Source: Mizuhopecten yessoensis (Eukaryota). From it: a stretch of DNA of 64,000 bases. Every line of letters begins with the position of its first letter. Positions within the stretch are counted from its first letter, which is position 1. Positions 6,052 to 64,000 of the stretch are shown here, piece by piece. The stretch lies in the NCBI RefSeq assembly GCF_002113885.1, contig NW_018408726.1, positions 3,182,642-3,246,641 on the forward strand, read 5' to 3'. A model generated the notes under the pieces. The model was not told the DNA's origin. It saw nothing but the letters and a program-made list of their open reading frames with translations, and searched no databases. A program made the position numbers and the translations under genes.

Positions 6052-6109
6052 CTGTGAATGAAAATAGATGACACAACTTAGACATACAACTTATAGATGC
6101 TTCGCGTTT

Positions 6110-6810
6110 GTAAAAACAGAGGTTGTGACTGGTTCACAATTGTATGAACAGAGGATGTGGCTGGTTCACGATTGTATAGACAGAGGTTGTGTCTGGTTCA
6201 TGTTTGCATAAACAGAGGTTGTGGCTGGGTCATGTTTGTATAAACAGAGGTTGTGGCTGGTTCATGTTTGTATAAACAGAGGTTGTGGCTGGTTCACGTT
6301 TGTATAAACAGAGGTTGTGACTGGTTCACGATTGTATAAACAGAGGTTGTTTCATGTTCACGTTTGTATAAAAAGAAGTTGTGACTGGTTCATGTTTGTA
6401 TAAACAGGGGTTGTGGCTGGTTCATGTTTGTATAAACAGAGGTTGTGGCTGGTTCATGTTTGTATAAACAGAGGTTGTGGCTGGTTCATGTTTGTATAAA
6501 CAGAGGTTGTGGCTGGTTCACGTTTGTATAAACAGAGGTTGTGGCTGGTTCACGATTGTATAAACAGAGGTTGTTTCATGTCCACGTTTGTATAAAAAGA
6601 AGTTGTGACTGGTTCATGTTTGTATAAACAGGGGTTGTGGCTGGTTCATGTTTGTATAAACAGAGGTTGTGGCTGGTTCATGTTTGTATAAACAGAGGTT
6701 GTGGTTGGTTAACGTTTGTATAAACAGAGGTTGTGGCTGGTTCATGTTTGTATAAACAGAGGTTGTGGTTGGTTCACGTTGTATAAACAGAGGTTGTGGC
6801 TGGTTCACGT
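6110..6810. repeat. 32-bp minisatellite (GTATAAACAGAGGTTGTGGCTGGTTCATGTTT) in FAX intron 4
   Basis: About 21 units, period 32. Confidence 0.97.
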
Positions 6811-7291
6811 TGGCTGTCGATATTTAACATTTATACAAACGTGTAGTGAATGTTCTCTGAGAGTCATCTGCTATACATATAGCTAACGGACAACATATGA
6901 GCGACAAGGATAATCAATGCTGATATATCATGCTTAGATGATAGTGCCACCAAATCAATAACATTGAATTCCATATTTAAAACATTTTATACCATCCTTT
7001 TTAGATTGATAATCTTATTTTTTCGCAAATGTGGATAGATAGTATGCATTCCTTCCTTGAGAATATGATAGAAAAACTTTGATAAAAAAGGTTAAGATTT
7101 CGTTGCCGCACAGTTCTCATAGTAAAATTTAGTTTCAGAGAAATAGAACTGTCACCAAGCTATACTAAGAAGTTTGTTAAAACCTAAGGGATCACAGAGA
7201 ATACACTGGCTGCTATAATTGAAATACAATAATTGAAGGTTTCAAGGAATATTCTTCATATGTATATTAAGGTTTATTTCTTCGTAATTAC

Positions 7292-7898: not shown

Positions 7899-8184
7899 CT
7901 TATATAGTGCAATAGAATAAACAGAATAAATATATAAATAAATAAATAATAATAATAATAATAGTTTCAAAGAAATAAGATATTTCTGGAATATTTACAT
8001 TTCGTTATTTTTTACTGTCCTTTAGTGTTTAGAATACAATTTGTATGTCGTCATTTTAACTGTACGTAACTGCTTAGATTACAATATGTCGGGCAATATT
8101 TACAATGTTTGGATTGTTCCTTAGAATTTTAAATGTCCATTCCGTCCGTCTATGTTTCGATTATCCCTTATTGATTTAGACTCT

Positions 8185-11100: not shown

Positions 11101-11345
11101 GTACTGTCCGTGATTGTTTGCACTGTCTGTGAGTGTGTGTACTGTGAGTGTTTGTACTGTTTGTGACTGTTTGTACTGTCCGTGAGTTTTTGTACTGTCT
11201 GTGAGTGTTTGTACTGTCCGTGAGTGTTTGTACTGTCCGTGAGTGTTGGTACTGTTCGTGGGTGTTTGTACTGTCTGTGAGTGTAGGTACTCTCCGTGAG
11301 TGTTTTTAATGTCCGTGATTGTTTGTACTGTCCGTGAGTGTTTGG
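8185..11345. repeat. 19-bp minisatellite (GTGAGTGTTTGTACTGTCC), ~3.1 kb, in FAX intron 2
   Basis: Period 19. It explains ORFs 8121-9251, 10051-11352 and 10503-11123. Confidence 0.98.
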
Positions 11346-11491
11346 ACTGCATGTAATTTTGTTTTGTTTTGCAATATTCCCTCGTTTGATAGTGTTTTTT
11401 CTACATTTTCAAAAAAAGCCAGTGCATTACACACAGCGTAACATGTACATGTAAGGATTGGTTCATTCAGCTTAAATAAATTTGATAATAC

Positions 11492-22429: not shown

Positions 22430-24085
22430 ACGTTAGTTTCAGTTCTATTTTTAAACGCTGAAATTAGTTTCATTCCTGTGCCTAAGTGCTAACGCTAGTT
22501 CCAGTTCTGTGCCTGAGTGCTAACGCTAGTTCCAGTTCTGTGTCTGATTGCTAACATTAGTTCCAGTTCTGTGTCTGAGTGCTAACGCTAGTTCCAGTTC
22601 TGTACCTGAGTGCTAACTCTAGTTCCAGTTCTGTGTCTGATTGCTAACATTAGTTCCAGTTCTGTGTCTGAGTGCTAGCATTAGTTCCAGTTCTGTGTCT
22701 GAGTGCTAGCATTAGTTCCAGTTCTGTGTCTGAGTGCTAACGCTAGTTCCAGTTCTGTGCCTAAGTGCTAACGCTAGTTCCAGTTCTGTGTCTGAGTGCT
22801 AGCATTAGTTCCAGTTCTGTGTCTGAGTGCTAACGTTAGTTCCAGTTCTGTACCTGAGTTCTAACGCTAGTTCCAGTTATGTACCTAAGTGCTAACGCTA
22901 GTTCCAGTTCTGTGTCTGAGTGCTAATGCTAGTTCCAGTTATGTACCTGAGTGCTAACGCTAGTTCCAGTTCTGTGCCTAAGTGCTAACGCTAGTTCCAG
23001 TTCTGTGTCTGAGTGCTAATGCTAGTTCCAGTTCTGTGTCTGAGTGCTAACGCTAGTTCCAGTTCTGTACCTGAGTTCTAACGCTAGTTCCAGTTCTGTA
23101 CCTGAGTTCTAACGCTAGTTCCAGTTCTGTACCTGAGTTCTAACGCTAGTTCCAGTTATGTACCTAAGTGCTAACGCTAGTTCCAGTTCTGTGTCTGAGT
23201 GCTAATGCTAGTTCCAGTTATGTACCTGAGTGCTAACGCTAGTTCCAGTTCTGTGCCTAAGTGCTAACGCTAGTTCCAGTTCTGTGTCTGAGTGCTAATG
23301 CTAGTTCCAGTTCTGTGTCTGAGTGCTAACGCTAGTTCCAGTTCTGTATCTGAGTTCTAACGCTAGTTCCAGTTCTGTACCTGGGTTCTAACGCTAGTTC
23401 CAGTTCTGTACCTGAGTTCTAACGCTAGTTCCAGTTCTGTACCTGGGTTCTAACGCTAGTACCAGTTCTGTACCTGAGTGCTAACGCTAGTTCCATTTCT
23501 GTACCTGAGTGCTAACGCTAGTTCTAGTTATGTACCTAAGTGCTAACGCTAGTTCCAGTTCTGTTCCTGAGTTCTAACGCTAGTTCCAGTTCTGTGTCTG
23601 AGTGCTAATGCTAGTTCCAGTTCTGTACCTGAGTGCTAACGCTAGTTCCAGTTCTGTGTCTGAGTGCTAACGCTAGTTCCAGTTCTGTGCCTAAGTGCTA
23701 ATGCTAGTTCCAGTTCTGTACATAAGTGCTAACGCTAGTTCCATTTCTGTACCTGAGTTCTAACGCTAGTTCCAGTTATGTACCTAAGTGCTAACGCTAG
23801 TTCCAGTTCTGTACCTGAGTTCTAACGCTAGATCCAGTTATGTACCTAAGTGCTAACGCTAGCTCCAGTTCTGTGCCTAAGTGCAAACGCTAGTTCCAGT
23901 TCTGTACCTGAGTGCTAACGCTAGTTCCAGTTCTGTGCCTGAGTGCTAACGCTAGCTCCAGTTCTAAACCTAAGTGCTAACGCTAGCTCCAGTTCTAAAC
24001 CTAAGTGCTAACGCTAGTTCCAGTTCTGTGCCTAAGTGCAAACGCTAGTTCCAGTTCTGTGCCTGAGCTCTAACGCTAATTCTAG
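22430..24085. repeat. 31-bp minisatellite (GAGTGCTAACGCTAGTTCCAGTTCTGTGTCT) in P1 intron 1
   Basis: Period 31, about 52 units. Confidence 0.97.
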
Positions 24086-24227: not shown

Positions 24228-24310
24228 ATGCTAAAGGTGGAAGTTGTGTTGTTGATAGTAGCAGTGGCGCTCGTATCAGCACATGCCTACTGGTGCAGGC
24301 GTCCCTTTCG
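24228..24310 (+). CDS. P1 secreted peptide exon 2: MLKVEVVLLIVAVALVSAHA-YWCRRPF
   Basis: Acceptor CTTCACAG (24221) and donor GTAAGT. Hydrophobic signal ending AHA, homologous to P2/P3 exon 2. Confidence 0.8.
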
Positions 24311-28694: not shown

Positions 28695-30262
28695 TCTACA
28701 GTAATATCACATAGATAGGGGCATGGTGCCTACAGTAATAGGACATAGATAGGGGCAGGGTGCCTACAGTAATAGGACATAGATAGGGGCATGGTGCCTA
28801 CAGTAATAGGACATAGATAGGGGCATGGTGCCTACAGTAATAGGACATAGATAGGGGCATGGTGCCTACAGTAATAGGACATAGATAGGGGCATGGTGCC
28901 TACAGTAATAGGACATAGATAGGGGCATGGTGCCTACAGTAATAGGACATAGATAGGGGCATGGTGCCTACAGTAATAGGACATAGATAGGGGCATGGTG
29001 CCTACAGTAATAGGACATAGATAGGGGCATGGTGCCTACAGTAATAGGACATAGATAGGGGCATGGTGCCTACAGTAATAGGACATAGATAGGGGCATGG
29101 TGCCTACAGTAATAGGACATAGATAGGGGCATGGTGCCTACAGTAATAGGACATAGATAGGGGCATGGTGCCTACAGTAATATGACATAGATAGGGGCAT
29201 GGTGCCTACAGTAATATGACATAGATAGGGGCATGGTGCCTACAGTAATATGACATAGATAGGGGCATGGTGCCTACAGTAATATGACATAGATAGGGGC
29301 ATGGTGCCTACAGTAATATGACATAGATAGGGGCATGGTGCCTACAGTAATATGACATAGATAGGGGCATGGTGCCTATAGTTATATGACATAGATAGGG
29401 TCATGGTGCCTACAGTAATATGACATAGATAGGTGCATGGTGTCTATAGTAATATGACATAGATAGAGGCATGGTGCCTACAGTAATATGACATAGATAA
29501 GGGCATGGTGCCTACAGTAATATGACAAAGATAGGGGCATGGTGTCTATAGTAATATGACATAGATAGGAGTAATATGACATAGATAGGGGCATGGGGTC
29601 TATTGTTATATGACATAGATAGGGGCATGGTGCCTATAGTTATAATATGACATAGATAGGGACATGGTGTCTATAGTAATATGACATAGATAGGGGCATG
29701 GTGTCTACAGTAATATGACATAGATAGGGACATGGTGCCTATAGTAATATAACATAGATAGGGGCATGGTGCCTACAGTAATATGACATAGATAGTGGCA
29801 TGGTGTCTACAGTAATATGACATAGATAGTGACATGGTGCCTATAGTAATATAACATAGATAGGGGCATGGTGCCTACATTAATATGACATAGATAGTGG
29901 CATGGTGTCTACAGTAATATGACATAGATAGGGGCATGGGGCCTACAGTAATATGACAAAGATAGGGGCATGGAGTCTATAGTAATATGACATAGATAGG
30001 GGCATGGTGTCTACATTAATATGACATAGATAGGGACATGGTGCCTATAGTGACATAGATAGGGGCATGGTGCCTACAGTTATATGACATAGATAGGGGC
30101 ATGGTGCCTACAGCAATAGGACATAGATAGGGGCATGGTGCCTACAGCAATAGGACATAGATAGGGGCATGGTGCCTACAGTAATAGGACATAGATAGGG
30201 GCATGGCGCCTACAGTAATATGACATAGATAGGGGCATGGTGCCTACAGTAATATGACATTT
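28695..30262. repeat. 34-bp minisatellite (CCTACAGTAATA(G/T)GACATAGATAGGGGCATGGTG)
   Basis: Period 34, about 46 units. Confidence 0.97.
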
Positions 30263-34480: not shown

Positions 34481-37400
34481 TATATACTAGAGGAAAAAGT
34501 GACTGTGTAGGGCGATCATGCTGATAAAAACATAAGTTCAAGACATAAAACGATAAAAAATGCAGGTAACATTCTTTATTAGGCAGTTTGCAAAACTTCA
34601 ATACATTAAAAATGCCACAGCATCCGTCATTTTATTAGTATTGGGGAAGAAAGACACGAGGGGTCAAAAACCTAAAAACGCTAAAAGCGTGTGTGTCCAC
34701 CATTTATGTCGATGCGGGCCTGACACCGTCGCCTTATAAAGCGTACCGAATTGCTGAAGAATACCTGGGGAATGCCGTTTCAGATCTGGACAAACGTGTG
34801 ACCCAACGCTGCCAACGTCACCGGCTATGTAGGCAGCTCACGTAAACGACGTTTCATCTCATCCCAGACGTGCTCGATCGGTGAAAGATCGTGTGTGACT
34901 GCAGGCCAAGGCAACAGGGATGTTATGCTGCTCTAGAAAATTACCACCGTAAGGTCTAGCGTAGTCTTGCTAAAGCGTGACGTGACGTTGCTGTACACAA
35001 ATGGGATGACGTAAGCCTGGATAATATAGCCACGGTAGCGTACGGCGTTCAAATTGCCATCGATTGCCACAAGAGGTGTACGTCAGCTCCACAACACAGG
35101 CGTCATTGAAACGTTCTCAAATACGACGATAGACTATTGAACGGCCGTCGCTGCTGTCTAAGTGAAACCTGGACTCCACCGTACGCAGAATACCCGTCCA
35201 GTCTCGGCAAATAAAGCGCAACGTCTTGGCTACACCAAGCCAAACGTGCTACACAATGGCGTCTTAGCAGAATTGGAAGGACAGCTGGACGTCGAGGTAT
35301 GATACGCCGTTTACGAATTCGATTCCGTACAGTTCTGGGGCTGATGGCACGCAAATCAGGAATGGTCCGCGCTGTCAGACTTGCCCTTTGTAAGCGATTC
35401 TGGAGGTGCACCAGTCGGATATGATTTTCCTGTTTTCTTGACGTCACGCTTGGACGACCTGTACGTGGTCGGTCACTCTCATTACCAAATTGATCAAATT
35501 TTCTCCACAAAGCTTGAATAGTGTTTATGTGAACACCAAAAGCGTAGCAACAGCGCGATGGTGCATACCAGCCTGGATGGTTTTAATTGCGCGAAGGCGG
35601 TCACTTTCATTTAGCCTGGGCATTGCTCTACTACCACTTTCAACAGAAACGAACTACTTTCTTGTTTACCAGCTTTCCAAACAATGACAGTTGCAAAGTC
35701 GATAATAACTGGCACAATAAATATAAAATGCTTTCTCTTCTTCTAATACACATCTTGCAAGAATTTTAACTAAATATCAGGTACACAATATCATTCAATG
35801 TCCTACAAGAATAACTAATACATCAGAAACTGGTATTAACATATTCTATGTTAACAATCTAAACATAGTGCAGAGTTCAGACAGAAGTTTTATCACCACT
35901 ATGTAGTGACCACAGTCCTATTGTTATGAATTTATGTTTCAAAGTATTAAGAGTAAAATCATTTGTAAAAGAAATTTTAAATTTAGTGAAGCTAACTGGA
36001 ATGAAATAAATAGATGTCTTTTAGAATTGATTGGAATACATTAATTGGACATAATGATAATGTAAATGAGATAAATAGTATACTTGTAAATCAAATAAAC
36101 TTGCTTACTGAAAAGTATATTCAATGCAAAGTAATAAGAATAAAGCCAATTGATAAACCATGGATAACTAATGAAATAAGAACACAGTTAAGGAAAAAAA
36201 ATAGATTTCATAAAATAGCAAAAAATACTAATAAAGAAAATGCCTGACAGAAATTTAGAATTTTGAGAAATAGTGTATTTGACCTTATTAGAAAAGCTAA
36301 AGATACATATCTTAGGAAACTTCAAAAAGCTCTTGTAGATAAGACCATACCACCTAATAAGTGGTGGCGTATTGCCCATAAGTGGTCTTTCCAATAAAAA
36401 AGAAACTTCTCATCCTCTTAAAGCTGGTAATGATATTTTGATTCATCCGTTGGATAAAGCAGAAGCTATTAATAATGTATTTACTTCTATTTCCAGCTCT
36501 GTTGATGGTACTGTTAATATTAACAATCCTGATATGGATTTACCTCCCCTTAGTCAAATCAAACTTGGTGAAATTGTAATATCAGATCAAGACATAATTG
36601 ATCAAGTCCAGCTAATTAAGGATAATAAACCTCCTGGGCCTGACAATGTTTCCCCTTAAAATAATAAAAAAAATCCTTCTACCTTCTATAATTATACCAC
36701 TTGATATTCTCTTTAATAAAACAATTACTTCTGGTACTATTCCTCTAGCCTGGAAGTCTGTTAATGTTTATGCTCTATATAAAGGTAAAGGAGCTATTGA
36801 TGATCCAAATAATTATAGACCAATTGCCATCACATCCATTTTAAGTAAAATATTAGAGAAAATATTTTTTAAGTATGTTTTTAATTATGTAATCAAACAT
36901 CATATTATTAGTGAGCACCAATCTGGATTTCAACATAGAGACTCTACAGTCAACCAACTAATATCAATACATAATTTGATTATGGATAACATTGATAAAG
37001 GTAGGGATGTACGATTAGTGTTTTGTGATATAAGTAAAGCTTTGAAAAAAATATTGCATACCTGGAAATTTGTATAAATGGTTTCTTTCTGATAGAAAAC
37101 AAAGAGTTATCTTTGATGGTTATAATTCTACATTTAAACATATAACTACTGGTGTTCCACAAGGCTCTGTACTTGGACCTTTTTTATTCTTACTTTTTAT
37201 TAATGATATAACTCATGAAATTAATACTAATATGAAATTATTTGCTGATGATACCTCTCTCTATGTTATTGTTGATGATAATATTGTAACACCAACTGCT
37301 GAGTTAAATGACGACCTTAAAACTATTAATACTTGGCCTAAAATATGGAAAATGAATTTTTATCATAATAAAAAAGGTTGCACTAACTGTAAGTAAGAAA

Positions 37401-43539: not shown

Positions 43540-46110
43540 GTTACCATATGTCTGTTGTTTGCTCAGTACCGTTTGTATGTTGTTTGCTCTGTACCGTATG
43601 TCTGTTGTTAGCTTGCTACCGTATGTCTGTTGCATACTCACTATACCGTATGTCTGTTTTTTACTCACTATACCGTATGTCTGTTGTTTGCTTACTTCCG
43701 TATGTCTGTTGTTAACTTACTACCTTATGTCTGTTGTTAGCTTACTACCGTTTGTCTGTTGTCAACTTACTACCGTTTGTCTGTTGTCAACTTACTACCG
43801 TATGTCTGTTGTTAGCTTGCTACCGTATGTCTGTTGCATACTCACTATACCGTATGTCTGTTGTTTGCTTACTACCGTAGTATGTCTGTTGATAGCTTAC
43901 TACCGTATGTCTGTTGTATACTCACTATACCGTATGTCTGTTGTTTGCTTACTACCGTATGCCAGTTATTTGCTTACTTCCGTATGTCTGTTGTAACCTT
44001 ACTACCGTATGTCTGTTGTAAGCTTACTACCGTATGTCTGTTGTTTGATCACTACCGTATGTCTGTTGTTAGCTTACTACCGTATGTCTGTTGCATACTC
44101 ACTATACCGTATGTCTGTTGTATACTCACTATACCGTATGTCTGTTGTTTGCTTACTTCCGTATGTCTGTTGTTTGCTTACTTCCGTATGTCTGTTGTTA
44201 GCTTACTTCCGTATGTCTGTTGTTAACTTACTACCTTATGTCTGTTGTTAGCTTACTACCGTATGTCTGTTGTATACTCACTATACCGTATGTCTGTTGT
44301 TTACTCACTATGCCGTATGTCAGTTGTTTGCTTATTTCCGTATGTCTGTTGTTAGCTTAGTACCGTATGTCTGTTGTAAGCTTACTACCGTATGTCTGTT
44401 GTTTGATCACTACCGTATGTCTGTTGTTATCTTACTACCGTATGTCTGTTGCATACTCACTATACCGTATGTCTGTTGTATACTCACTATACCGTATGTC
44501 TGTTGTTTACTCACTATACCGTATGTCTGTTGTTTACTCACTATGCCGTATGTCTGTTGTTTGCTTATTTCCGTATGTCTGTTGACAGCTTAGTACCGTA
44601 TGTCTGTTGACAGCTTACTACCGTATGTCTGTTGTATACTCACTATACTGTATGTCTGTTGTTTACTCACTATGCCGTATGTCTGTTGTTTGCTTATTTC
44701 CGTATGTCTGTTGACAGCTTAGTACCGTATGTCTGTTGATAGCTTACTACCGTATGTCTGTTGTATACTCACTATACTGTATGTCTGTTGTTAGCTTACT
44801 ACCGTTTGTCTGTTGTCAACTTACTTCTGTATGTCTGTTGTTTGCTTACTTCCGTATGTCTGTTGTTAGCTTATTACCGTATGTCTGTTGTAAGCTTACT
44901 ACCGTATGCCTGTTGTTAGCTTACTTCCGTATGTCTGTTGTATACTCACTATACCGTATGTCTGTTGTTTGATCACTACCGTATGCCAGTTGTTAGCTTA
45001 CTACCGTATGTCTGTTGTATACTCACTATACCGTATGTCTGTTGTTTGCTTACTACCGTATGTCAGTTGTTTGCTTACTTCCGTATGTCTGTTGTTAACT
45101 TACTACCGTATGTCAGTTGTTTGCTTACTACCGTATGTCTGTTGTTAACTTACTACCGTTTGTCTGTTGTTTGCTTATTTCCGTATGTCTGTTGTTGGCT
45201 TACTACCGTATGTCTGTTGTTAACTTACTACCGTATGTCTGTTGTTTGCTTACTTCCGTATGTCTGTTGTTAACTTACTTTCGTATGTCTGTTGTATACT
45301 CACTATACCGTATGTCTGTTGTTAGCTTACTACCGTATGTCTGTTGTTTGCTTACTTCCGTATGTCTGTTGTATACTCAATATACCGTATGTCTGTTGTT
45401 AGCTTACTACCGTTTGTCAGTTGTTTGCTTACTTCCGTATGTCTGTTGTTAGCTTACTACCGTATGTCTGTTGTTCGCTTACTACCGTATGTCTGTTGTC
45501 AGCTTACTACCGTTTGTCTGTTGTTAGCTTACTACCGTTTGTTGTATGCTCACTACCGTATGTCTGTTGTTAGCTTACTATCGTTTGCTGTTGCATGCTC
45601 GCTATCGTACGTCTGTTGTTAGCTTACTACCGTATGTCTGTTGCATCCTCCGTACCGTATGTCTGTTGTTAGCTTACAAATCGTTTGTCTGTTGTTAACC
45701 TACTACTGTATGTCTGTTGTTTGCTTACTACCGTTTGTCTGTTGTTAGCTTACTATCGTTTGTCTGTTGTTAACCTACTACCGTATGTCTGTTGTTAACT
45801 TACTACCGTATGTCTGTTGTTAACCTACTACCGTATGTCTGTTGTTTGCTTACTACCGTTGGTCTGTTGTTTGCTTACTACCGTATGTCTGTTGTTTGCT
45901 TACTACCGTATGTCTGTTGGTTGCTTACTACCGTATGTCTGTTGTTTGCTTACTATCGTAGGTCTGTTGTTTGCTTACTATCGTTTGTCTGTTGTTAGCT
46001 TGCTACCGTTTGTTGTTGCTTGCTCACTACCTTTTCTGTTGTTAGCTGACAACCGTATGTCTGTTATTAGCTTACTACCGTTTGTCTCTTGTATGCTGAT
46101 TATTTTATGT
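43540..46110. repeat. 25/27-bp minisatellite (CTTACTACCGTATGTCTGTTGTTAG / CTCACTATACCGTATGTCTGTTGTATA) in P2 intron 3
   Basis: About 100 units; source of the many Cys/Val/Leu ORFs at 43.5-46.1 kb. Confidence 0.97.
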
Positions 46111-46529
46111 CTGTTTTGTAACATTTGTTAATGTCCGCTGTGTTTTGTTATGTCATGTGTTTTAGGTGCTCCGTACTGTATGCCTGTTTTATTTTGCTTA
46201 GTAACGTGAGTGTGATATGCTCATGTTTATATGGCTGTTTTGTGCTTATAACTATAAACAGCTGCAAGCATGCCCTCTTTTTCTTAGTACATTAGTTATG
46301 TTGTATGCTAAATAAAGTTGTAAAATATAACTATGGTATGCTCATTTCCATAGTTCTTGCATAAGCTGGGTGATTATTGCCTAATGCACACATTACATTT
46401 TTACAATGTGTGATCCGTATGTCTGATAAAGTGCCTTAGAGTAGATTTGCGAATTATAAAGGGCGTTATACAAATGTTGTAAAAACATTTTTTTATTATT
46501 ATTTACGAAAAAGAAATGGTATATTCTTC

Positions 46530-47730
46530 TTCTTCCCTGATTTTTTGGCCACCTTATCTTTTGATTGGTAGCAGATGTGTTAACAGTCTTATAAGTATAT
46601 TGTAGGCCAAGGTCAAAAGGTAGCATTGCAACATTTTCAAGTAGGTCAAAAATCCAATATGGCCGCCATGACGTCATAGGTCAAAATCTTAAAATGGCCA
46701 CAACTCAAACTGTTGTTTGTACAGCAGTCATGCAATTATATTATTTGTAGATATTTGTCAGGGCTAACTTGTTTTCATTACATGTTATTACAAGAATGGT
46801 GAAGCAAAAATCCTCGCTGTTGGGTCAAAGGTCACCAATTTTTCAACTTCTTTATTTTTCAATATTTTTGAAAAATTCTTTTAGAAATCGATGCAATATG
46901 TCATTCCAATAAATTTGGTATCTTTAGTTTTTCTATAAAATATATTTCGTTTGCACTGTACGCCATTTTTGAAATGCCGAAAATATGTTAAAATCATTTT
47001 GTCCTAATCTCAAGGTTATAGGGGTCAAATGTCTTAAAATCTTAATACGGCCTCTTCTCAATAACCAAGAGACCCAGGGCGATGATATTTGGTAAGTAGC
47101 ATACTGATTTCAATTGTTATTAATTGCAATAAAATAATTGTATCAAAATTCAATTTCCGGTTTTCGGTAGGAGTCAAATTTCAAAAGTGCTATATTAGGT
47201 AACACATTTAAACAATCTTCTGCTTACGTTCTACAAGGTCTTGGGTCTTGACATTTCATATAAAAGGTTCTCAGGTGATTGGCTATTAAGTTTGTGAAAT
47301 TAATTGACCTTGACTTACTTTCAAGGTCGAAGGGGTCAAATGTCTAAAAATCTTTATACGGCCTCTTCTCAATAATCAAGAGGCCTAGGGCGATGATATT
47401 TCGACTGTAGCATATTGCTATCAATTGCTATTTATTGCAATAAAAAAAATCGTGTCAAAAGCCAACTTCCAGTTTTCGGTTTTTGTCAAAATTCAAATGC
47501 ATTCTTTTGGGGTAATAAACTTTGAAAAGCTTGTCCTGAGGTTGTTTAAGGTCTAGAGTCTTAATATTTGATATGAAGGATGCTGGATGTTTTGCTATAA
47601 GGCCAAACCAGTCCAAATAGTGAAAACCCCTCAAATTGTTAGCCAACAATTTCTAGTTTTGTATGATATTGTGAAAAAAAAAATGAATTTCTCATAACTT
47701 TTTATTAGTGTGGCCAACAAAAACATTTTC
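46530..47730. mobile_element. non-autonomous repeat fragment with an internal ~300-bp-period duplication, occupying the P2 exon-3 position
   Basis: GGGGTCAAATGTCT..TACGGCCTCTTCTCAATAA..GGGCGATGATATTT occurs at ~47020 and ~47332. AATATGGCCGCC and GGTCAAAGGTCA motifs are present. Homology to P3 breaks at both edges. Confidence 0.6.
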
Positions 47731-48223: not shown

Positions 48224-48335
48224 TCAAAGTTGCCGCCTGCATAAACGGGTCGTGTGACTCAAAGTACCAGTCTGCGTGAACTGTGACGAAAGCCAATGCC
48301 AGTGCCAACAACACTACTACCACTCTCAGCATCAT
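48224..48335 (-). CDS. P2 secreted peptide exon 2: MMLRVVVVLLALALAFVTVHA-DWYFESHDPFMQAATL (gene probably truncated)
   Basis: Acceptor TTGTATAG and donor GTAACT; 112 nt, phase 1, same length as P3 exon 2. Signal peptide is 19/21 identical to P3. Confidence 0.85.
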
Positions 48336-54100: not shown

Positions 54101-55310
54101 GATTTCGATCTATAATGATAAAGGCAAATGACACAGATATTCTTGTTATAAGTGTCAGTGTGTTGTCATCTTTTCAAAAGTAAGGCCTACAGACACTTTG
54201 GATTGATTTTGGTCAAGACAAAAATCAAAGATGGATTCCTATCCTTGATATCAATAGCCCGATTGGCTATGGTAAATCTGAGGGAACATCACTTTTTCAT
54301 GCCTTTACCGGTTGTGATATTGTATCAGATTCTCGGGGTAAAGGGAAGAAGACTGCATGGCAAACTTGGAATGTGTGTCCTGAAGTTACGTCCGTCTTTG
54401 CAAAACTCAGTAAGTATCCCCCTGTAGTTAGTGAATCAAATCAAGATATTTTGGAAATGTATGTCATTGCTATGTATGACAAATCAAGCCCTACTGCAAA
54501 TATCAACAATGCAAGACTTGATCTCTTCGCTCGAAAGAAAAGATCCTATGAGTCAATCCCTCCAACACATGGAGCTCTAATCGAGCATACTAGGCGAGCT
54601 GATTACCAAGCAGGTTGCATCTGGGGTCAGTCTATCATATCCAACATGGAAACTGAATGTCCTGGGGAATGGGGCTGGAATAAAAAGGGGGATATTTGAC
54701 AAATCGTGTGGACAAAACTTGCTTCAATTGCCCAGAGTTGTCAACAACTGACAAAATGTGGATGCAAGACGGAATGTTGTGGTCGACGCAAATGTTTCAG
54801 ATTAAGTCTACCTTGCACGGCATTGTGTGGTTGTAACTGTGAAACATAGATATACAGCTGTGTTGCAGTTATGACATTTAGATACCATGTTAAAATTAGA
54901 TTAGTGACAGGAGCTCACAATTTAAAATGAGGGGAAAAAACGTGTAAATATTTTTGTTTATTTTTTTCGCTTTATTTGTAGATATTATGATTTTAATTTT
55001 GCAAAAGGAAGGCTTAATAAAACCTTATGTGGTCTTTTCTTTTTGTTTTATTGTTAAATGTCATGAGATAGCTTTTAAAACTATTTTGAGATGAATCAGT
55101 ACGGTTAGTTTCATTTCTTTACCAAAAAAGGTAAGGAGATTTTATCAAAAAAATCCATTATGGCGTCCATCTTGGAAAAAGTGGCCGCCATTTTGGAATT
55201 TCAAATGGCTAACGTGCTTTTTGAGTTAAGTAGTGTTTAAAGAGTGTATGTACCAAATCCTATGCTTGCATTATTTTTTTTTATTTTTTTTTTACTATTC
55301 GGCTCAACTA
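51110..55310 (+). mobile_element. Academ (AcademX-type) DNA transposon, decayed
   Basis: 5'-TAG...CTA-3' termini, 3-bp TSD ATA (51107-51109 and 55311-55313) and long imperfect TIRs. Protein motifs MDNIDHNPTATTATTSFHGT, ADQPLYA, GLHI, XPG-like FHAFTGCD and IPPTxxALxEH..YQA, plus a C-terminal Cys cluster KCGCK..C..PCTALCGCNC. Confidence 0.88.
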
Positions 55311-55479
55311 ATAAGGAATTATAAGGCGACCGTAGTCCTACATACATTTAAAAACGTAGAAAACAGACTCATCATGATATTCATTGATTTACCGCCAAAA
55401 GAATAGACGTATACTGTTTTTCTAGCATTTTATTATCGCACATGCATCATCGTCAGGAAAAACGGATCAGATAGCACCT

Positions 55480-55540
55480 TATAAATACGAAATCCCATTG
55501 TGTTCATTTAGTATCGGTGTCACAGACGGACTCTTTAACG
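55480..55540 (+). promoter_or_regulatory. P3 TATA box (TATAAAT) and non-coding exon 1
   Basis: TATAAAT at 55480-55486 and donor GTGAGT at 55541; conserved with P2 and P4. Confidence 0.72.
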
Positions 55541-56148
55541 GTGAGTACTATCATTGAGATTTACGAAGTAAATGCTAACATACTTTAGCTGAATTGAGAA
55601 CTATATATTACATTTCAATAATAATGGTCATTCATATTTTGGTATAAAGTAGAACATGTATATTAAAAAAACCAATGAGTAATACGTAGCTATGCACCGA
55701 CATATTGTACAAAGTTTTAAACATCTTTATTTTGTTGATTTCCGAGAGAGAAACATGTTACTGTTTCAATGATTTTCTGCAGAATGAATATAATGCTAAT
55801 ATGCAGCAAAAGAGCAAAACCTAGAAGTGTAAATTGGAGATACGATAGCTATCACGCTCCACAGATTGTATACAGCATTATATGTGCGGTTTATATATTT
55901 TGTTTACGTATTTCACTTTTCCAAAAGTGCTTATTATTTACTTTATCGTTTTGACAATAGTAAGATATTATGTTTATGTATATATCTTTTTCCTATTTGT
56001 GATTATTATTTTCTTTACTGATTTTGATTTTAAATCCAGTACGGATAGCTTGACAATAGTGATGGTTCTATGTTTGTTCTACATTAAAATCCTACTCTGA
56101 TTTGCTGACGCTGATTAATACATTTCTACTTTGTTGTATAGAAGGAGA

Positions 56149-56260
56149 ATGATGCTGAGAGTGGTAGTTGTGTTGTTAGCCATAACCTTGGCTTTCGTCA
56201 CAGTTCACGCAACCTGGAACTATGATACACACGGCCCGATTCATTCAGGCGGCACTTTGA
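56149..56260 (+). CDS. P3 secreted peptide exon 2: MMLRVVVVLLAITLAFVTVHA-TWNYDTHGPIHSGGTL
   Basis: Acceptor TTGTATAG and donor GTAAGT; classic signal peptide; phase 1. Confidence 0.88.
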
Positions 56261-57178
56261 GTAAGTAGATACGTTTTCAACAGAAACAAAAATCGTCAAA
56301 TATTGTTTTCTTTTGTACATCGAAGTACCAGGTCTCCACGACATTTTAGTGATGTTCGTGATTTGATGTTAACCAGTTCCCCTCTTAATTTTGTTTACAT
56401 ATCAAAGAGATTTACACATATCAAATTCTCTTTAATCAGTACTTTAGACCAATTTGAATGTGCACCTATTTGGCCACTAGTACCACAGGTGATTCTCAGA
56501 AGGATTAAACAGCTCTATGGTGCAATGTAGTTCGTTTTTGGCATACCCTTTTAGAACAAATGTTATTGGACATTGGTCAAACTGTAAGACATTAATGCTC
56601 AAATATGTTTCGAAGATGACTTGGGTAAAGCCGCATTAAATCACGGGCATTGTGACGTAACGATTACGATCTGTTGCCTAACACAGAGGTGTGGTACATA
56701 CGTCACATCACAGAATCGTCCCCATCTATTTATGTATTTCTTCATGCGTTTCGCATTATTTTAATGTGGACTGCGTCTGTTATGTACGACGTACTACTAC
56801 GATGTTATGGAAAAGTAAGTTGTTTCTACTTTCGCATTATGATACCAGACCACCAACACGAATACAAAAAAAGGTCAACATTTGACTAAGGGGTAAAGGT
56901 TATAACAAAACCTTCAACAGTACATGATCCTACATACTGAAAGTTTGGCAATTACACAGTCCAGTGTGTTGCTGTATGCCAAGATACCGCCTAAATCACG
57001 ATTGACATGTTGACGGGAAGAGGTTGGGAATGCTTCACTACCAACGTTTCAGACAGTACATCACATATCATGTCAGAGGGGATAAGAAAGAAACACATAA
57101 AACATATTATCTGTGTACTGTTATATTATAGCTTTGAAATAAAAAAAAATATTACTGAATCCTATGTAATCAATACAG

Positions 57179-57285
57179 ATCATTGGCCCGGAAGGCACTA
57201 CTACCGTCGTGGATATTACGGACACAGAATACGTCTTCATTACAGAAATCGGTATAGGAGAAGGAGGTTCCCACGTGGTGGATAA
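57179..57285 (+). CDS. P3 exon 3: (N)HWPGRHYYRRGYYGHRIRLHYRNRYRRRRFPRGG*; precursor 72 aa
   Basis: Acceptor AATACAG in phase with exon 2. Donor GG|GTAAGT lies 20 nt after the stop. Confidence 0.85.
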
Positions 57286-58568
57286 TCACACAGCACACTC
57301 TCCGGGTAAGTTCCTCTCTGCGTCATAAAGAATCAAAACATGAATCCATATCATATCCCTTTTGTAAATAGTAGTAATAATATATCACATTTGTAAAGTG
57401 CCTTTTATTATTTGCAAGGCGCATTATCAGATATACGGTACTGAGCACATCACAGTCATGTTGTAATGTGTTCATTAGGCAATAACCGCACAACAGACAT
57501 ATGCTACAGACCACACCATGGCATGTACTACTGAACACGCATTAGACATAAGTAGCTAATATACAACAAACATACTGTAAGAACACAGAGTGGGCATAAT
57601 TACAGTTGTTTGTAATACAACATAAACATAGTACTGAACATACAACATACACACTGTACTGAGGTTACAACAGACATACGTTAATGAGCATACGCCATAT
57701 AAGAGATAGTGAGCATATAACAGACAAACGGTACTGAGCACATTTGGCAATTATCTTACACGTCTAACTTATCACTTAACTAGTATATCTACTCTTTTGA
57801 TTGTAACGTCACATATCCATTTTAATTATCATTCAAGAAGATCCTTCTGTATACCATTAAACAAAGCCCTCCTTAATGTCACCTATTAGGTTTTTTATAC
57901 TACACTAATCATTTATTAATATTTCAAGTTGTAATCTTACAGTCTTCGTCAAGTAAGGAAATCAAATGGCTTGCATTTCATAATCTGTTTTTTTTCTATT
58001 TCCTCCTTTGGTTTAAAACTAAAACAGTTGTGATATCGCACAACGTATCAAAATAACCGCACGAAGTGTGCGCTACAGATTAATCAATCAGTCGCCTCGT
58101 TGTGCGATAAAACGTGCACGTATGTGTGATATGGTAAGATCGGTTGTTTGATGTTACGGAATGAAAAAAACCCAAAAAGATCGAGAGAAATAAGATACAT
58201 CGTATACGTATTAAACACAACAGATATTCGGTAAGAAATATTTAGTAATGTGAAGACAGCAAGCATATAGTAATGCGAAGACAGCAAACATATAGTAATG
58301 TGAAGACAGCAAGCATATAGTAATGTGCACACAGCAATGATATGGTAATGAGCACACAACAGAGAAGTAGTAATGTGCACACAGCCGACATACGTTAACA
58401 CGTTATCTTCAATATACTTCTGGGATTACACAAATTGTCAACGCACTGGAGCTAACACAAGTAGTCCATATTTACTGTGAGTTTTGCGACTTAATGTCGA
58501 TTAACTAGTACAGAATGCTACTGAACATTGAGGGTTTTATTCATACTCACTTTGTGTTATATTTTCAG

Positions 58569-58690
58569 ATCCTGTTTCTTACAAAATATTTGGATAACCA
58601 ACCACTGACAGGTTCTGTAAAGATTAGGAAAGTCATCGAAGAACATTGTTCTTTTTTGTGTTTTATATAAATAAAAACACAGTCAACTGC
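58569..58690 (+). other. P3 3'UTR exon 4 with AATAAA (58670-58675)
   Basis: TTTTCAG acceptor; homologous to P1 exon 4. Confidence 0.65.
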
Positions 58691-60965
58691 TATTTAGTTT
58701 TCTTTCTTTGTCTGGCCTTCAAACCCAATTTGTTTAAAAAAAATATGAGACATTACTAACTCTTTTAATTGAAATTAAAATAGAATAGAAATTATCTAAA
58801 CTTTATTTTTTAACATGCATTTCTCCGCGAATCCAATAAATAATCAAAAGTGTGATGAAAAAATATCAGGGATAACATGCCAAATAAGTTACAATTGTAT
58901 ACATTAACGCCGTTATTGTACATTGTACCAAGACATTGAGCGTCACCAGGGGTAATGCAGGAAGAAGTACGTTAACGGCTTATTTCAGACGTGGCATTAG
59001 GATTCACAGGCAAAAAAAGTTTAAATTATCATACCTAAAAACGTCTTAAGAATCAATGTATCAACATAGTATCGCTGTACGTAATAATTCAACAATTTAC
59101 ACGCCAATGGCAAAGGTTAGGGAACACGTTTGAGTTTGAAATTATCCCGCCGATTTACGACCGTATAAAAAAAACCCACATAAATCCTTGTAAAGTTTAC
59201 CGTCTATGCTTTCATTATCAGACGATCGTTCAGGTACTTCAGGAAAATATACATGTATATTGAAACAAATGATACAGAAATTAGAATAAGAAGTTATCTA
59301 CAACCCTATACTAATTACATATTTGTACCATTAATTACAATGAGGGATGTTTCCAAACGTACATACAGTATGTCATATAAATAGAGACAGGATATTTAAT
59401 GGTTTCTTGCTATCCCGTTGTTAAAGACGTCCTTCTGTCTGCTTGTAAATATATCACAGGGATTAATCGGTAAGTCAAGATGACGATTTCTACTGTTATT
59501 AAGGTAATACAAATTCATAAGGAAAGTTTTTAATCATATTTTTAATACAAATGCTCATGTATTTGTGGAAGTCATTTAAATTGTTCTCTCACAGCATAGT
59601 CTAGATACTTATCGAAAATGTATGTTACCCCACTATAGGTAACTAGAGTTTAGACGAATGTTGCCGTACAACATATTAACATATATACACGTATATACAA
59701 TGAATGGAGAATTAAACCTAGCTTTACATATAACTGTAAAGATTACGAAATATTAATGGAATAGTTAATGGCTACGTCACCGCCAAAGCTTATCGCTGTC
59801 TACTTGATAACATATCACTGAGCTTCGCCAATAATTCAAGGCGACGATTGGTGTTTTTATAGAGAAACAAACATTTCATGAGAAAAACTCCGACCTATTT
59901 TTGTCACATTTAAAATATCACAAAACGAATACACAAAATACTCATCATCGATTCTTTTTTCTCGTAAATCCTAGAATATCTTTGCTTTGTACAATGTATT
60001 AAAAGGTCACGTGTCCTACTCTAAGCTGATCATACATCCTGACAATAGCAGGATTCACTTTAGTTATTAAGCCCCATTAATGAGTTATTCAATATTATTT
60101 ATATCATATATCTACACACAACTGAGGGTTTTACGTATTTATTTCTAACCCTCTCTGATACGATTTGTGATATTCTTTCTAAATGTTTGCAAATTTACAA
60201 GAAAAGCATACAAGTCCTGTATATATTACCTCTGCAGATATATTACATAATGAATGGAAACGAACTATGGTGTACAGGTTACAAGTTCCACACGCATAGG
60301 TCAATCGAAGTTAACTAAATGAAATAGGAAAGAGAGTTGTGTACCTTAACCATGGATCAAGGCCAGCTTTCCGGTCCGTTGCTTTGCAGATAGTGTTTAA
60401 GGGAAATTCTTGCAAACGTGAAGCTAGAAGGCGACCATCTTTCTTTCTTTCGTTTTAGTCTACATCGTTGTAAGCGTTTTAGCTTTTGAAGATGTCTTGA
60501 TTGAATTTCGTTTACTATTTCATAATGTTCATCCGGTTACGCATATAGCATACATTGATAAAAAGTCATAATCATATAAGCAATTCAAACCTATCACACT
60601 TCCCCCTCCCCCCTCTTGTTATAAATTTAAAATGTGTTCATCCCGAACACCACACATTCCTAGTCATCACAAGGAGGGCCACGAACACCATTTGAAACAG
60701 GAAAAAGCGTAGTGTGCTCCGTTGGTGATCAAATAAGCGACCCCAAGCTCCCAAGTCGGTCGCTCCACCAATGGGATTAAAGGGAATATTTCTAGTGCAA
60801 AGCTAGAATGCGACCGTCATCCTACATACATCTAATAAACTTTTTAAGAACAATAAAAAAAAGATTCATTATTTTATATTTAATATTTTTTCACTAAAAA
60901 TGTAGGCGTATATTGTTTTTACTAGCATTTTATTATCACATGCATCATCTGAAGGAAAGACGGAT

Positions 60966-63141
60966 TGATTGATTGATTGATTGATTGATGGATAGGTTTT
61001 ACGTCCGCTTCACTACCGAGTATTTCGGTTATCCAGCAGACGGAGAACAGAAAGGAAAATGAGTAGAAGGGATGAAGTATGGAGTAAAAGAGTAGAGGAG
61101 TGGGATAGGTTAGAGAAGGGGCCTTCTATCCTATATATATTAACTGTATAAGTTTAGTTTTTGTAAGACGGCTCCTAATGCCTAATAATGCCTTAACCTA
61201 ACACTCATCGTACAGCATCACCAAGTCAGTGCCGGAAGTGAGGTACTGTGCCGCCTCCAGCCACACCAGCCCCTGCCTATTCTATGAATTTGGCTTGTAT
61301 ATAAGATTTGGAAGTCCATCTAAATGTCTTAATAAAGAGACCCTAGTTCTAACGGCCTAAAATTTTGGATAAAGTTTTCACTATCCTCTGTGTCGGCGTT
61401 TACGCGCCTACTCTTTTTCGAAAAAACAAGAGGGATTTTGTTCGTGCGAGATTGGACAGTTCTCACACGGGTCTCCATTTATAGTCCCATCCGACGGACT
61501 GTATATTAGTGGTAAGTGTCATGCATGTGCTGTTTTTTTGTTGTCCGTTCCATGTACTCCTCTCCTCATTCATCACTGAGAATAAACCTGACTATACTTG
61601 TACCAATGACATCTTTCTTATAAACCTCGACTTGCCTTTCATTTATTTCTGCTCATCGTTCGTATGGGTTGGTTTGTTAGTTGTGTGAAGATATTTAGTG
61701 GTTGTTGTGTTTACTTTTACGTGTAATTAATCATGTATACACATATATATATATAGTATTTTACTCGATTAGACATAAGATTGCTGTGGGGTGGGAGACT
61801 CGTCCATTTCTTAAAAACGGAACATCCCGCACGTGGTCAGAACACATACGTTGCAGCTTTCTTACATCAACCGAAAGTGAAATGTTTTTAGGTTTTGAAT
61901 AATTAATTAGAGTTTTTTGATTTGAATATTAATTAAGTTTGTTTATTAGTTTGAGTGATTGGATATTGTTGTTATTACACTATTCGCTGTGTCAGATACA
62001 CAGATATTGATTATTAGTTCATTATTCGATTATCCCGTTATTCCTACCTAACTAATAGGTCCATATAGCACCGTTGGCCTCGAAGCTCCCTCCTTTACCA
62101 CCGCTAACCTTGTAGGGTTTTACGCCGAATGAGCAAGAGGGCCTATTTTATGGGTCGTATTATACAGTTTATAGTGGTAATACAGTTCTATCCTAATGTA
62201 TATCCACCGTTTAAGCTTTGTACAGTCGAAAAACGGTTGCACATCGCTCTCCAGCGGTACATATATATTTATTCATGTGTATGTGTACATGTATACACAC
62301 ATATATATATATAATATTATACTCGATTAGACATAAGATTGCTGTGGGGTGGAAGACTCGTCCATTTTTTAAAAACGGAACATCCCGCACGTGGTCAGAA
62401 CACATACGTTGCAGCTTTCTTACATCAACCGAGTGTGTAATCATAGTTTTTTTGTTGTTATTAACTTTAATGATTTCATTTTTGTGTTTTTTGCTTGTGT
62501 TTGCTTTTGATTTTTCCTTAGTATCGGGTGCTGGTCGTTTCATCTTGATTTTGTGCCAGGTGGTGTTTATTTTATAGTACGTTTGATTATTTCTTTCCTT
62601 GTGAGGCTTCTATTTGTTTATTTTAGAATCGGGTGCCGGTGGTTTTTTTTATTATTAATTTTTTTAAATGGCTTTGTTGTCCAGGTGGTGGTGTTTTTAT
62701 TGTGATTTATAGATTTTGTTATTTTGTTATTTTAATACTTATTAGTTGATTTCTGTAATTTGCCGCTGGTTTTATTCTGATGGATATGTATATGTTTTGT
62801 TTACTTGGACATTATTTTCCTGTCTGTATAGGTTTGCTTATACACAAGTTTGGTCTATATAATGGTTGATATGTTTTAAGTACTTACATTCTATCTTAGT
62901 CATCATGATGAAGAAGACCTTATACTTTGGGAGCAGTTTTATACAGCGTCTGGGGAGATATGTCGGAGACAGGGATGGAAGTGCGAGTTATCATGGACGG
63001 GGAGGCCCTAGACTTTGTCAGGTTACGGCAGAGATGCGTCGGCGTGTGATCCAGGAGAGGGCTGACGTCGTCATCATGCAGCTAGGGGCAAATGACATCG
63101 CACCTGATCGGCTCCCCGGGGATATTGTTGATGACATGGAC
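60966..63141 (-). mobile_element. composite retroposon with 8-bp TSD, (AATC)n tail, Nin-like SINE domain, internal direct repeats and an antisense SGNH fragment
   Basis: TSD AGACGGAT at 60958-60965 and 63142-63149; (GATT)n at 60963-60989. Minus strand 61390-61500 reads CCGTCGGATGGGACTATAAATGGAGACCCGTGT..GCACG..CGAAAAAGAGTAGG. Confidence 0.75.
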
Positions 63142-63156: not shown

Positions 63157-64000
63157 CACCATATTAATACGAAATCCCATCGTTCTAATTTAGTATCGTT
63201 GAGTACTATCATCCGATTTATATTTAAGTAAAATACACGTGTGCTTTTCACCGACATATTGTACAAAGTTTTAAACTGTGTAAGACAGAAAGCAGACTTT
63301 CATTTCAGATTTTGTCCTTGTTTATTAATACTGCGGTCGATTTTCATTTTATTTTTGTTACCTAACGAGTGAGAAACATGCTGCTGTTTCAAAGATTTTC
63401 TACAGAATAAATATAATGCTAACATGTAACAAAAGAGCAAAACTCAGAAGTGTAAATTAAAGATACGATAGATATCACGCTCCAGAGATTGTATACAGCA
63501 TTTTATGGGTGATTTATATATCATGTTTACGTATCTCTCTTTTTTCCAAATTGTGATTATTCAATTAAATCCTGATAGCTAAACAATAGTGATGACTGTG
63601 ACGAAAGCCAAGGCTTTGGCTATGGAAATGTATTGATCTGTTATCTTTCTTTTCCGGGAGTTTTTAAACGTGAATGTATATAGGATTACGGTCGCCTGCT
63701 AGCTTTGAACTAGGGACCAATTCCTATAATTCCATTGCAGGTCGGTGGGATAGGTCGAACCTGGGAAAAAAAGTTACTATGTTATCAAACTCTTCTGATT
63801 TCAACTCATCAATGTCTCTAGTATGCTAGAAAAAAAGACCCGAAAGATTCCCTTTGGGGAAAACAATGAGGCCATTTTAAACTTTGACCTATTTTTCACC
63901 TTTTTTCGCCAAAAATGAAGAACGAGAACATATCGGTTAGATGAAAAAAAATTCAGATTTTTGATATTTTCTTTGTTACAAGAGTGCTGCAAATATGTTA

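What the first reader, a model, noticed from the sequence alone, without database searches (positions are those of the whole stretch)
56149..57285. P3 encodes a Cys-free, highly cationic Arg/Tyr/His/Gly peptide with a C-terminal Gly
The predicted 51-aa mature peptide TWNYDTHGPIHSGGTLNHWPGRHYYRRGYYGHRIRLHYRNRYRRRRFPRGG has 12 Arg, 8 Gly, 7 Tyr, 6 His, 2 Trp, 1 Asp and no Cys or Lys (counted). The terminal Gly is a possible amidation donor, and RR/RRRR could be convertase sites. The composition fits linear cationic AMPs (histatin- or myticalin-like). It equally fits Tyr(DOPA)/Arg wet adhesives like mussel Mfp-3, and His may bind metal. Function is inference.
Basis: partly seen in the sequence, partly recalled or inferred. 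Interest (0 to 1): 0.78.

Follow-up and report, generated by a model that had tools for sequence, protein, structure and literature searches.

The report
Secreted arginine-tyrosine-rich peptide gene, scallop
This is a real, spliced and expressed small gene, probably from a scallop, that encodes a secreted, cysteine-free, very basic 51-residue peptide with no detectable relatives; it is most likely a fast-evolving defence-type peptide, but its function is untested.

Summary
ATG 56149, coding exon 56149-56260 (donor GT), phase-1 intron of 918 nt and coding exon 57179-57285 give a 72-aa precursor. That is a 21-aa signal peptide plus a 51-aa peptide with R12 G8 Y7 H6 W2 D1 and no Cys or Lys (6.4 kDa, pI 11.6, about +11).

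The exact 56260>57179 GT..AG joint stands in transcript-like contigs of two independent studies. A 3'UTR exon (58569 on, AATAAA 58670) was also found. The expressed variants are 93-97% identical to the window. Their listed differences lie in the peptide-coding part, are mostly non-synonymous, and include in-frame indels. The tail FPRGG becomes SRGWVG or SRGWPFG, so the final Gly is always kept.

An inverted paralogue, P2, keeps the signal peptide (3 synonymous, 2 non-synonymous codon changes). In the mature part 11 of 16 codons changed, all non-synonymous. Pfam, two word searches and a profile search of 1.84 billion proteins found no relative.

Best reading, about 0.5: a lineage-restricted, hypervariable, linear cationic host-defence-type peptide. 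It is analogous to myticalins but not a member: it has no anionic propeptide and a different signal peptide. A Mfp-3-like adhesive role (about 0.2) is not excluded. The tissue of expression is unknown.

The parts
56110..56148 (+). 5' untranslated part of the first coding exon. One transcript-like contig (X2) is colinear with the genome back to 56110. Contigs of X1 and X3 are instead joined at 56140 (acceptor ...tgtatag) to an upstream exon not found in the window.
   Evidence: table 8 records 1, 9, 16; loose ends at 56140; the upstream letters are absent from the window
56149..56211 (+). Signal peptide, 21 codons: n-region MMLR, a 15-residue hydrophobic core, and a c-region ending V-H-A.
   Evidence: conserved in paralogues P2 (19/21 aa) and P1
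56212..56260 (+). First 16 residues of the mature peptide, near neutral and His-bearing, plus the first base of codon 38. The donor GTAAGT follows.
   Evidence: joint
56261..57178 (+). Phase-1 intron, 918 nt, GT..AG.
   Evidence: table 5: joint 56260>57179 in X2 (side 151) and X3 (side 121)
57179..57285 (+). Coding exon 2: the last 35 residues, holding all 12 Arg, 6 of the 7 Tyr and the terminal Gly-Gly, then stop TAA.
   Evidence: variants tables 3 and 4
57286..57305 (+). Start of the 3'UTR, up to a donor (ccgg|gtaagt) that is used in X3. X2 reads through it to 57464.
   Evidence: loose end at 57305; record 9
58569..58690 (+). Probable terminal 3'UTR exon. The acceptor ttttcag| is followed by 13 letters identical to the X3 loose end. 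AATAAA lies at 58670-58675. The exon's end is approximate.
48224..48335 (-). Paralogue P2, first coding exon: 112 nt, same phase, part of an inverted duplication (55358-56657 matches 49049-47822).
46499..46557 (-). Candidate second coding exon of P2. It would encode a short Lys-rich tail of 19 residues in phase. It is unverified and may instead be a deletion derivative.
   Evidence: no RNA evidence
24228..24310 (+). Distant paralogue P1, first coding exon: a related signal peptide, then YWCRRPFR. Its donor is in phase 2. No second exon was found.
63594..63629 (-). Decayed fragment of a fourth signal-peptide exon, with no ATG and a stop soon after.

Best explanation
P3 is an expressed gene with two coding exons and a further 3'UTR exon. 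It belongs to a small, lineage-restricted cluster of secreted-peptide genes. The product enters the secretory pathway and loses a 21-residue signal peptide. What is released is a Cys-free, unstructured or extended peptide of about 6.4 kDa: a near-neutral His-bearing head (exon 1) and an extremely basic Arg/Tyr/His/Gly tail (exon 2). I infer that it acts as a host-defence-type peptide. The Arg guanidinium groups and the Tyr/Trp rings would bind anionic microbial surfaces or polyanions, the C-terminal Gly probably serves as an amide donor, and the His residues add charge at low pH. The gene family evolves in the way defence peptides do, with a conserved signal peptide and a rapidly diversifying mature part. 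What is shown: the gene model, the splicing, expression in some samples, the composition, the paralogy, the variability and the absence of relatives. What is inferred: the signal-peptide cleavage site, amidation, any convertase cut and the antimicrobial role.
For: The splice joint 56260>57179 stands in contigs of two studies, and exon 1 contigs stand in three. The peptide is 6.4 kDa, pI 11.6 and about +11, with all Arg in the exon 2 part. P3 against P2, exon 1: codons 1-21 have 3 synonymous and 2 conservative changes, while codons 22-37 have 11 changed codons, all non-synonymous and none synonymous. The flanking non-coding DNA is 83-89% identical against 78% for the mature part. In the expressed variants all 5 listed exon 2 substitutions are non-synonymous (L>P, N>Y, F>S, P>R, R>G). 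Insertions of 3 nt in total (X2) and 6 nt (X3) keep the frame, the stop and the final Gly (tables 3 and 4, read). In X2, neighbouring non-coding contigs are 99-100% identical while the peptide-coding part carries most of the differences (table 8). There are three paralogues plus a remnant within 40 kb. Mussel myticalins are a precedent: Cys-free, Arg/Tyr-rich, hypervariable, often amidated through a terminal Gly, and expressed at low, tissue-specific levels (PMC5577615).
Against: There is no functional or tissue information. The one poly-A raw run laid shows almost no expression. The peptide is not helically amphipathic: its hydrophobic moment is below the shuffle mean, and the strand-type moment is only borderline (p about 0.05). 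Unlike myticalins and most invertebrate antimicrobial peptides, it has no anionic propeptide to neutralise it during export. The contrast in substitution types rests on one paralogue pair and two or three variant contigs. Those contigs could come from a paralogous locus rather than from alleles. Hypervariability with a conserved signal peptide is also seen in Mfp-3 adhesives and in toxins.
Confidence: 0.5

Rival explanations
1. It is a structural or adhesive material protein, working like mussel Mfp-3 or basic Gly/Tyr shell-matrix proteins. On this reading it is secreted by foot or mantle glands, its Tyr is converted to DOPA, and Arg-aromatic cation-pi contacts drive coacervation and surface priming or cross-linking.
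For: Mfp-3 is 5-7 kDa, Cys-free, the most polymorphic plaque protein (30-35 variants), and rich in Gly, Tyr/DOPA, Arg and Trp (PMC5132118). P3 is 6.4 kDa, Cys-free, variable, and 20% aromatic with 23.5% Arg. Tyr-rich proteins are main components of scallop byssus (PMC9168380).
Against: The composition differs from Mfp-3f. Gly is 15.7% against 25%, Asx 7.8% against 10-18%, Tyr 13.7% against about 20%, His 11.8% against 1%, Lys 0 against 15%, and Arg 23.5% against 10%. The small Tyr-rich byssal proteins reported for scallop are 20-29 kDa, not 6 kDa. No sequence relative was found. Tissue is unknown.
Confidence: 0.2
2. It is a neuropeptide or hormone-like precursor. Convertases would cut at RR and RRRR, carboxypeptidase would trim the ends, and a short C-terminal amidated peptide (from ...FPRGG) would be the active signal.
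For: It has a signal peptide. RRRR fits the furin-type R-X-K/R-R consensus (established knowledge). The terminal Gly is conserved in three variants.
Against: The putative released C-terminal peptide is not conserved: FPRGG, SRGWVG and SRGWPFG. There is no repeated or conserved peptide unit, no orthologue in any search and no Pfam family. Neuropeptides are normally under purifying selection, not diversifying.
Confidence: 0.07
3. It is a young, lineage-specific transcribed ORF with no settled function, or one member of a decaying duplicated cluster. It is spliced and weakly expressed, but the peptide is not made in useful amounts.
For: Expression in the poly-A raw run is very low. Cluster members look degraded: the P4 remnant, the P2 second exon largely deleted, and no second exon found for P1. 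The gene is unannotated and has no relatives.
Against: The frame, the stop and the terminal Gly are kept across variants despite two indels. The signal peptide is conserved with synonymous changes. Contig depths of 24-27 in X1 and X3 indicate real expression in some samples.
Confidence: 0.15

Closest known systems
Myticalins and modiocalins (linear cationic antimicrobial peptides of Mytilida; PMC5577615)
   Same: Both are Cys-free, with pI above 11, more than 10% Arg, and Arg/Tyr-rich members. Both have a conserved signal peptide beside a hypervariable mature part, belong to a multigene family, and vary between individuals. In both, a 5'UTR intron ends just before the ATG, there is a phase-1 intron, and a terminal Gly is used as an amide donor.
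   Different: The signal peptide is unrelated to the consensus MKGxxLLLLTIxxALCMIxECEG. P3 has no KR site and no anionic C-terminal propeptide. The P3 intron splits the mature peptide rather than the propeptide. The published survey found no myticalin-like sequence in scallop genomes. P3 is an analogue, not a member.
Mussel foot protein 3 (Mfp-3f/3s)
   Same: Both are 5-7 kDa, Cys-free, non-repetitive, highly polymorphic, secreted, and rich in Arg, Tyr, Gly and Trp.
   Different: P3 has twice the Arg, 12% His, no Lys, and less Gly, Asn and Tyr. There is no sequence similarity. Gland expression and DOPA are unknown.
Histatins (from my own knowledge, not tested here)
   Same: Both are short, Cys-free and rich in His, Tyr, Gly and basic residues. 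Histatins bind metals and kill fungi.
   Different: Histatins are a primate salivary family that is basic mainly through Lys and His. P3 is Arg-dominated and has no N-terminal X-X-His copper site. There is no homology.
Molluscidins (dibasic-repeat antimicrobial peptides from oyster and abalone gill; cited in PMC5577615)
   Same: Both are short, probably unstructured, and rich in dibasic residues, from molluscs.
   Different: No sequences were at hand for comparison. Molluscidins were purified from tissue, whereas P3 is only predicted.

Membership tests
Myticalin/modiocalin | Conserved signal peptide (50% consensus MKGxxLLLLTIxxALCMIxECEG) | tested here: not met
   The P3 signal peptide (window:56149-56211) shows no match to the consensus quoted in PMC5577615. 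The comparison was by eye only.
Myticalin/modiocalin | Cationic Cys-free mature region with pI above 11 and more than 10% Arg | tested here: met
   pI 11.56, Arg 23.5%, no Cys
Myticalin/modiocalin | Lys-Arg cleavage site followed by an anionic C-terminal propeptide of 35-75 aa | tested here: not met
   The stop codon directly follows Gly-Gly at 57283. The RNA variants also stop there.
Myticalin/modiocalin | Gene of three exons: a 5'UTR exon, an exon with the signal peptide plus the whole mature peptide, and a phase-1 intron inside the propeptide | tested here: not met
   The phase-1 intron and the intron just before the ATG are present. However, the intron splits the mature peptide after residue 16, and there is an extra 3'UTR intron.
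Mfp-3 | 5-7 kDa, Cys-free, non-repetitive, polymorphic | tested here: met
   6.4 kDa, no Cys; variant C-termini
Mfp-3 | Gly 25-29 mol%, Asn/Asp 10-18 mol%, Tyr+DOPA about 20 mol% or more | tested here: not met
   Gly 15.7, Asx 7.8, Tyr 13.7 mol%, against Table 1 of PMC5132118
Mfp-3 | Made in the foot gland, located at the plaque interface, and carrying DOPA and hydroxyarginine | not testable with these tools
   Run tissues are coded and no proteomic data were at hand.
Linear cationic antimicrobial peptide (functional class) | Secreted, net cationic, short, no disulfides | tested here: met
Linear cationic antimicrobial peptide (functional class) | Amphipathic arrangement of charge and hydrophobic side chains | tested here: inconclusive
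   The helical moment is 0.36, below the shuffle mean of 0.48. The strand moment is 0.69 against 0.48, reached by 5% of shuffles. AlphaFold on exon 2 alone gave a weak helix at 12-29, pLDDT 65.
Linear cationic antimicrobial peptide (functional class) | Measured antimicrobial activity, or induction by infection | not testable with these tools
Neuropeptide precursor | Conserved bioactive peptide flanked by basic sites, with orthologues across taxa | tested here: not met
   The C-terminal peptide differs among the three variants. No relatives were found.

The most novel reading that the evidence does not exclude
P3 and its neighbours are the first family of linear, Cys-free, hypervariable cationic defence peptides in scallops. 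On this reading they arose independently of mussel myticalins and are built differently: there is no anionic propeptide, a neutral His-rich head sits on one exon, and an Arg/Tyr warhead that ends in an amidated residue sits on another. This would be convergent evolution of the same defence strategy in two bivalve orders.
Probability: 0.4. Interest if true: 0.6.

Novelty: new variant of a known kind. Interest (0 to 1): 0.5.

Why it matters
Almost all known bivalve antimicrobial peptides are disulfide-rich. Myticalins were reported as the first linear ones in mussels and as restricted to Mytilida. An unrelated, unannotated family in a scallop, with the same evolutionary signature, would show that such genes are systematically missed by annotation and by homology searches. 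It would also give a short, easily synthesised Arg/Tyr/His peptide to test. If the peptide instead turns out to be a byssal or shell component, it would be a very small cation-pi adhesive module from outside the mussels. In both cases the gene model and the variant C-termini given here make the question directly testable.

Tried and rejected
Pfam on both exon peptides and on P2 exon 1 gave only a sub-threshold SPAR hit on the signal peptide (E 0.046, 13.9 bits against a cut-off of 27), which I dismissed.

The word-index searches with the exon 1 ORF (45 aa) and the exon 2 ORF (92 aa) found no candidate.

The profile search of exon 1 peptides against 1.84 billion representatives gave one hit, P0001 (E 5.6e-4). 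This is the translation of a 57-bp tandem repeat on an unrelated eukaryote-like ENA contig, with no nucleotide similarity around it. I rejected it as spurious.

The PDB sequence search of exon 2 found only chance TPR matches at E about 2. Rfam on 55000-62500 found nothing. A literature search for exact peptide fragments found nothing.

The upstream 5' exon seen in X1 and X3 could not be placed in the window. No second exon could be found for P1 by acceptor and phase scanning.

AlphaFold on exon 2 alone is too weak to use.

Database searches and a fold with the joined 72-aa precursor were left out. All searches were made exon by exon, by reference. The exons were joined only inside local scripts, for translation and composition.

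The organism is coded in the run tables. 'Scallop' comes from other agents' notes, and I did not verify it.

Full report
**Observation.** On the + strand an ATG at 56149 opens a 112-nt coding exon (56149-56260) that ends at a canonical donor (TTGA|GTAAGT). After 918 nt an acceptor (ATACAG|AT) opens a second coding exon (57179-57285) that ends in TAA. The intron is in phase 1 and the join is in frame.

The product has 72 residues. The first 21 form a textbook signal peptide: a short basic n-region, 15 hydrophobic residues, and V-H-A at -3 to -1. This leaves a 51-residue peptide. In a six-frame scan of the whole window, no other open stretch comes near this Arg-plus-aromatic content.

**Expression and gene model.** Contigs of three 'RNA?' runs from three studies (X1, X2, X3) cover exon 1. 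The contigs of X2 and X3 carry the exact joint 56260>57179 (GT..AG, 918 skipped), with 121-151 letters on the shorter side. The predicted splice is therefore real.

The X3 contig leaves the genome again at 57305, a donor 20 nt after the stop. The first 13 letters of its loose end match 58569-58581 perfectly. That site lies directly behind the acceptor ttttcag, about 100 nt before an AATAAA at 58670. The gene therefore has a 3'UTR intron and a terminal exon near 58569-58690. X2 instead reads through to 57464.

At the 5' side, X2 is colinear with the genome back to 56110. X1 and X3 are joined at 56140 to about 238 nt that I could not find anywhere in the window. If the 30 letters shown are the ones next to the joint, they add two in-frame ATGs. 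This would lengthen the n-region of the signal peptide but would not change the mature peptide.

A poly-A raw-read run (X24) has only about 0.3-0.5x on exon 1. Expression is therefore low or tissue-restricted in that sample. Contig depths of 24-27 in X1 and X3 indicate real expression elsewhere. Run tissues are not disclosed. Intron-covering contigs at lower depth (5-7) look like pre-mRNA or some DNA carry-over.

**Variation.** The transcript-like contigs are not identical to the window.
- All five listed exon 2 substitutions are non-synonymous when read: 57236 L>P, 57247 N>Y, 57269 F>S, 57272 P>R, 57274 R>G.
- Two insertions add 3 nt in total in X2 and 6 nt in X3. The frame, the stop and the last Gly are kept.
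- The tail FPRGG of the window becomes SRGWVG in X2 and SRGWPFG in X3 (tables 3 and 4). One further substitution in X3 is not listed, so these readings are near-complete, not complete.
- In X2, neighbouring non-coding contigs are 99-100% identical to the window (records 11 and 12). Most differences of the exon 2 contig fall in the last 50 coding bases.

I cannot say whether these contigs are alleles or a close paralogue elsewhere in the genome.

**Family.** The P3 locus is one arm of an inverted duplication: 55358-56657 matches 49049-47822, and the 25-bp minisatellite downstream of P3 is expanded to about 100 copies downstream of P2.

Exon 1 of P2 (48335-48224, - strand) has the same length and phase. 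In codons 1-21 (signal peptide) there are three synonymous and two conservative changes. In codons 22-37 (mature part) 11 codons differ, all non-synonymous and none synonymous, partly through a compensated frameshift. The flanking non-coding DNA is more alike than the mature-coding part (83-89% against 78%).

The second exon of P2 is largely deleted. A homologous acceptor would give a 19-residue Lys-rich tail (46557-46499), which is unverified. A more distant copy, P1 (24228-24310), shares the signal peptide and the invariant Trp at mature position 2, but its donor is in another phase and I found no second exon. A fourth copy near 63600 is a remnant.

This pattern, a conserved signal peptide beside a fast-changing secreted part in a local cluster, is the pattern described for defence peptides and toxins, and also for Mfp-3.

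**Relatives.** None were found. Pfam gave nothing. The word-index search found no candidate for either exon ORF, which also means that the gene itself is not among the annotated proteins of that collection. A profile of the three exon 1 peptides against 1.84 billion representatives gave a single hit at E 5.6e-4, which is the translation of a 57-bp tandem repeat on an unrelated contig. PDB sequences gave nothing. No paper in the library prints fragments of the peptide. Small intron-split genes are often unannotated, so absence from protein libraries does not prove that the family is restricted to this lineage.

**Properties.** The mature peptide is 6.4 kDa with pI 11.6 and about +11 at pH 7 (about +15 at pH 5.5, because of six His). 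All 12 Arg lie in the exon 2 part. The exon 1 part is near neutral. There is no helical amphipathicity, and a strand-like alternation (as in RIRLHYRNRYR) is borderline (5% of shuffles reach it). AlphaFold on exon 2 alone gives a low-confidence helix that I do not rely on. RRRR fits the furin-type consensus. Whether it is cut is unknown, and cutting there would remove the variable tail and the Gly.

**Comparison with the known.** Myticalins (PMC5577615) work the way I propose for P3 and evolve the same way. P3 nevertheless fails their defining features: the signal-peptide consensus, the KR site plus anionic propeptide, and the exon layout. The authors also found no myticalin-like sequence in scallop genomes.

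Mfp-3 (PMC5132118) shares size, lack of Cys, polymorphism and an Arg/Tyr/Gly/Trp flavour. Its composition differs strongly, as set out under the rival explanation. The small Tyr-rich byssal proteins reported for scallop are 20-29 kDa (PMC9168380).

**Verdict.** The most likely function is a hypervariable secreted cationic defence-type peptide (about 0.5). A material or adhesive role (about 0.2), a neuropeptide-like role (about 0.07) and a weakly expressed gene with no settled function (about 0.15) remain open. That the genome is a scallop comes from other agents' notes and was not verified here. Searches and folds with the joined precursor were left out by rule; everything was done exon by exon, by reference.

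Noticed in passing
window 4001-5488, 6101-6811, 8180-11349, 22465-24082, 28696-30260, 43542-46115: There are six long minisatellite arrays (periods 19-34 bp, 22-168 copies, 82-91% matches). Two flank the peptide genes: the 31-bp array ends 146 bp upstream of the P1 start codon, and the 25-bp array lies downstream of P2. A short copy of the same 25-bp repeat family lies downstream of P3 (57615-57740).
   Followed up: partly
window 60919-61500: This stretch has very high depth in all four runs, with word depth up to about 4200 and both strands equal in raw RNA reads. Hundreds of loose ends with many different continuations sit at 61041/61042. It looks like the end of an abundant, transcribed interspersed repeat. 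There is no Rfam match.
   Followed up: partly
window 15953-16723 (-), 36646-37074 (+), 35103-35507 (-): Two reverse-transcriptase fragments (RVT_1, E 1.6e-19 and 2.3e-07) and a weak Tc3-type transposase HTH lie here. These are decayed mobile elements between the peptide genes.
   Followed up: no
window 46499-46557 (-): The homologous acceptor of P2 is followed by an open frame for a 19-residue Lys-rich tail in place of the Arg/Tyr tail of P3. It is either a second kind of cationic warhead on the same signal peptide or a deletion pseudogene.
   Followed up: partly
window 56140 (joint to sequence outside the window): In two studies exon 1 is spliced to the same upstream sequence of about 238 nt, which is absent from the 56 kb upstream in this window. 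That sequence may be a distant or haplotype-specific 5' exon, or the expressed copy may sit at another locus.
   Followed up: partly
L001:5001-5261: On a 904-kb eukaryote-like contig of an ENA assembly, a 57-bp tandem repeat translates to a thrice-repeated motif (...HSTWNSDINRPF...). The motif resembles the junction of signal peptide and mature peptide in P3. I judged this chance.
   Followed up: yes
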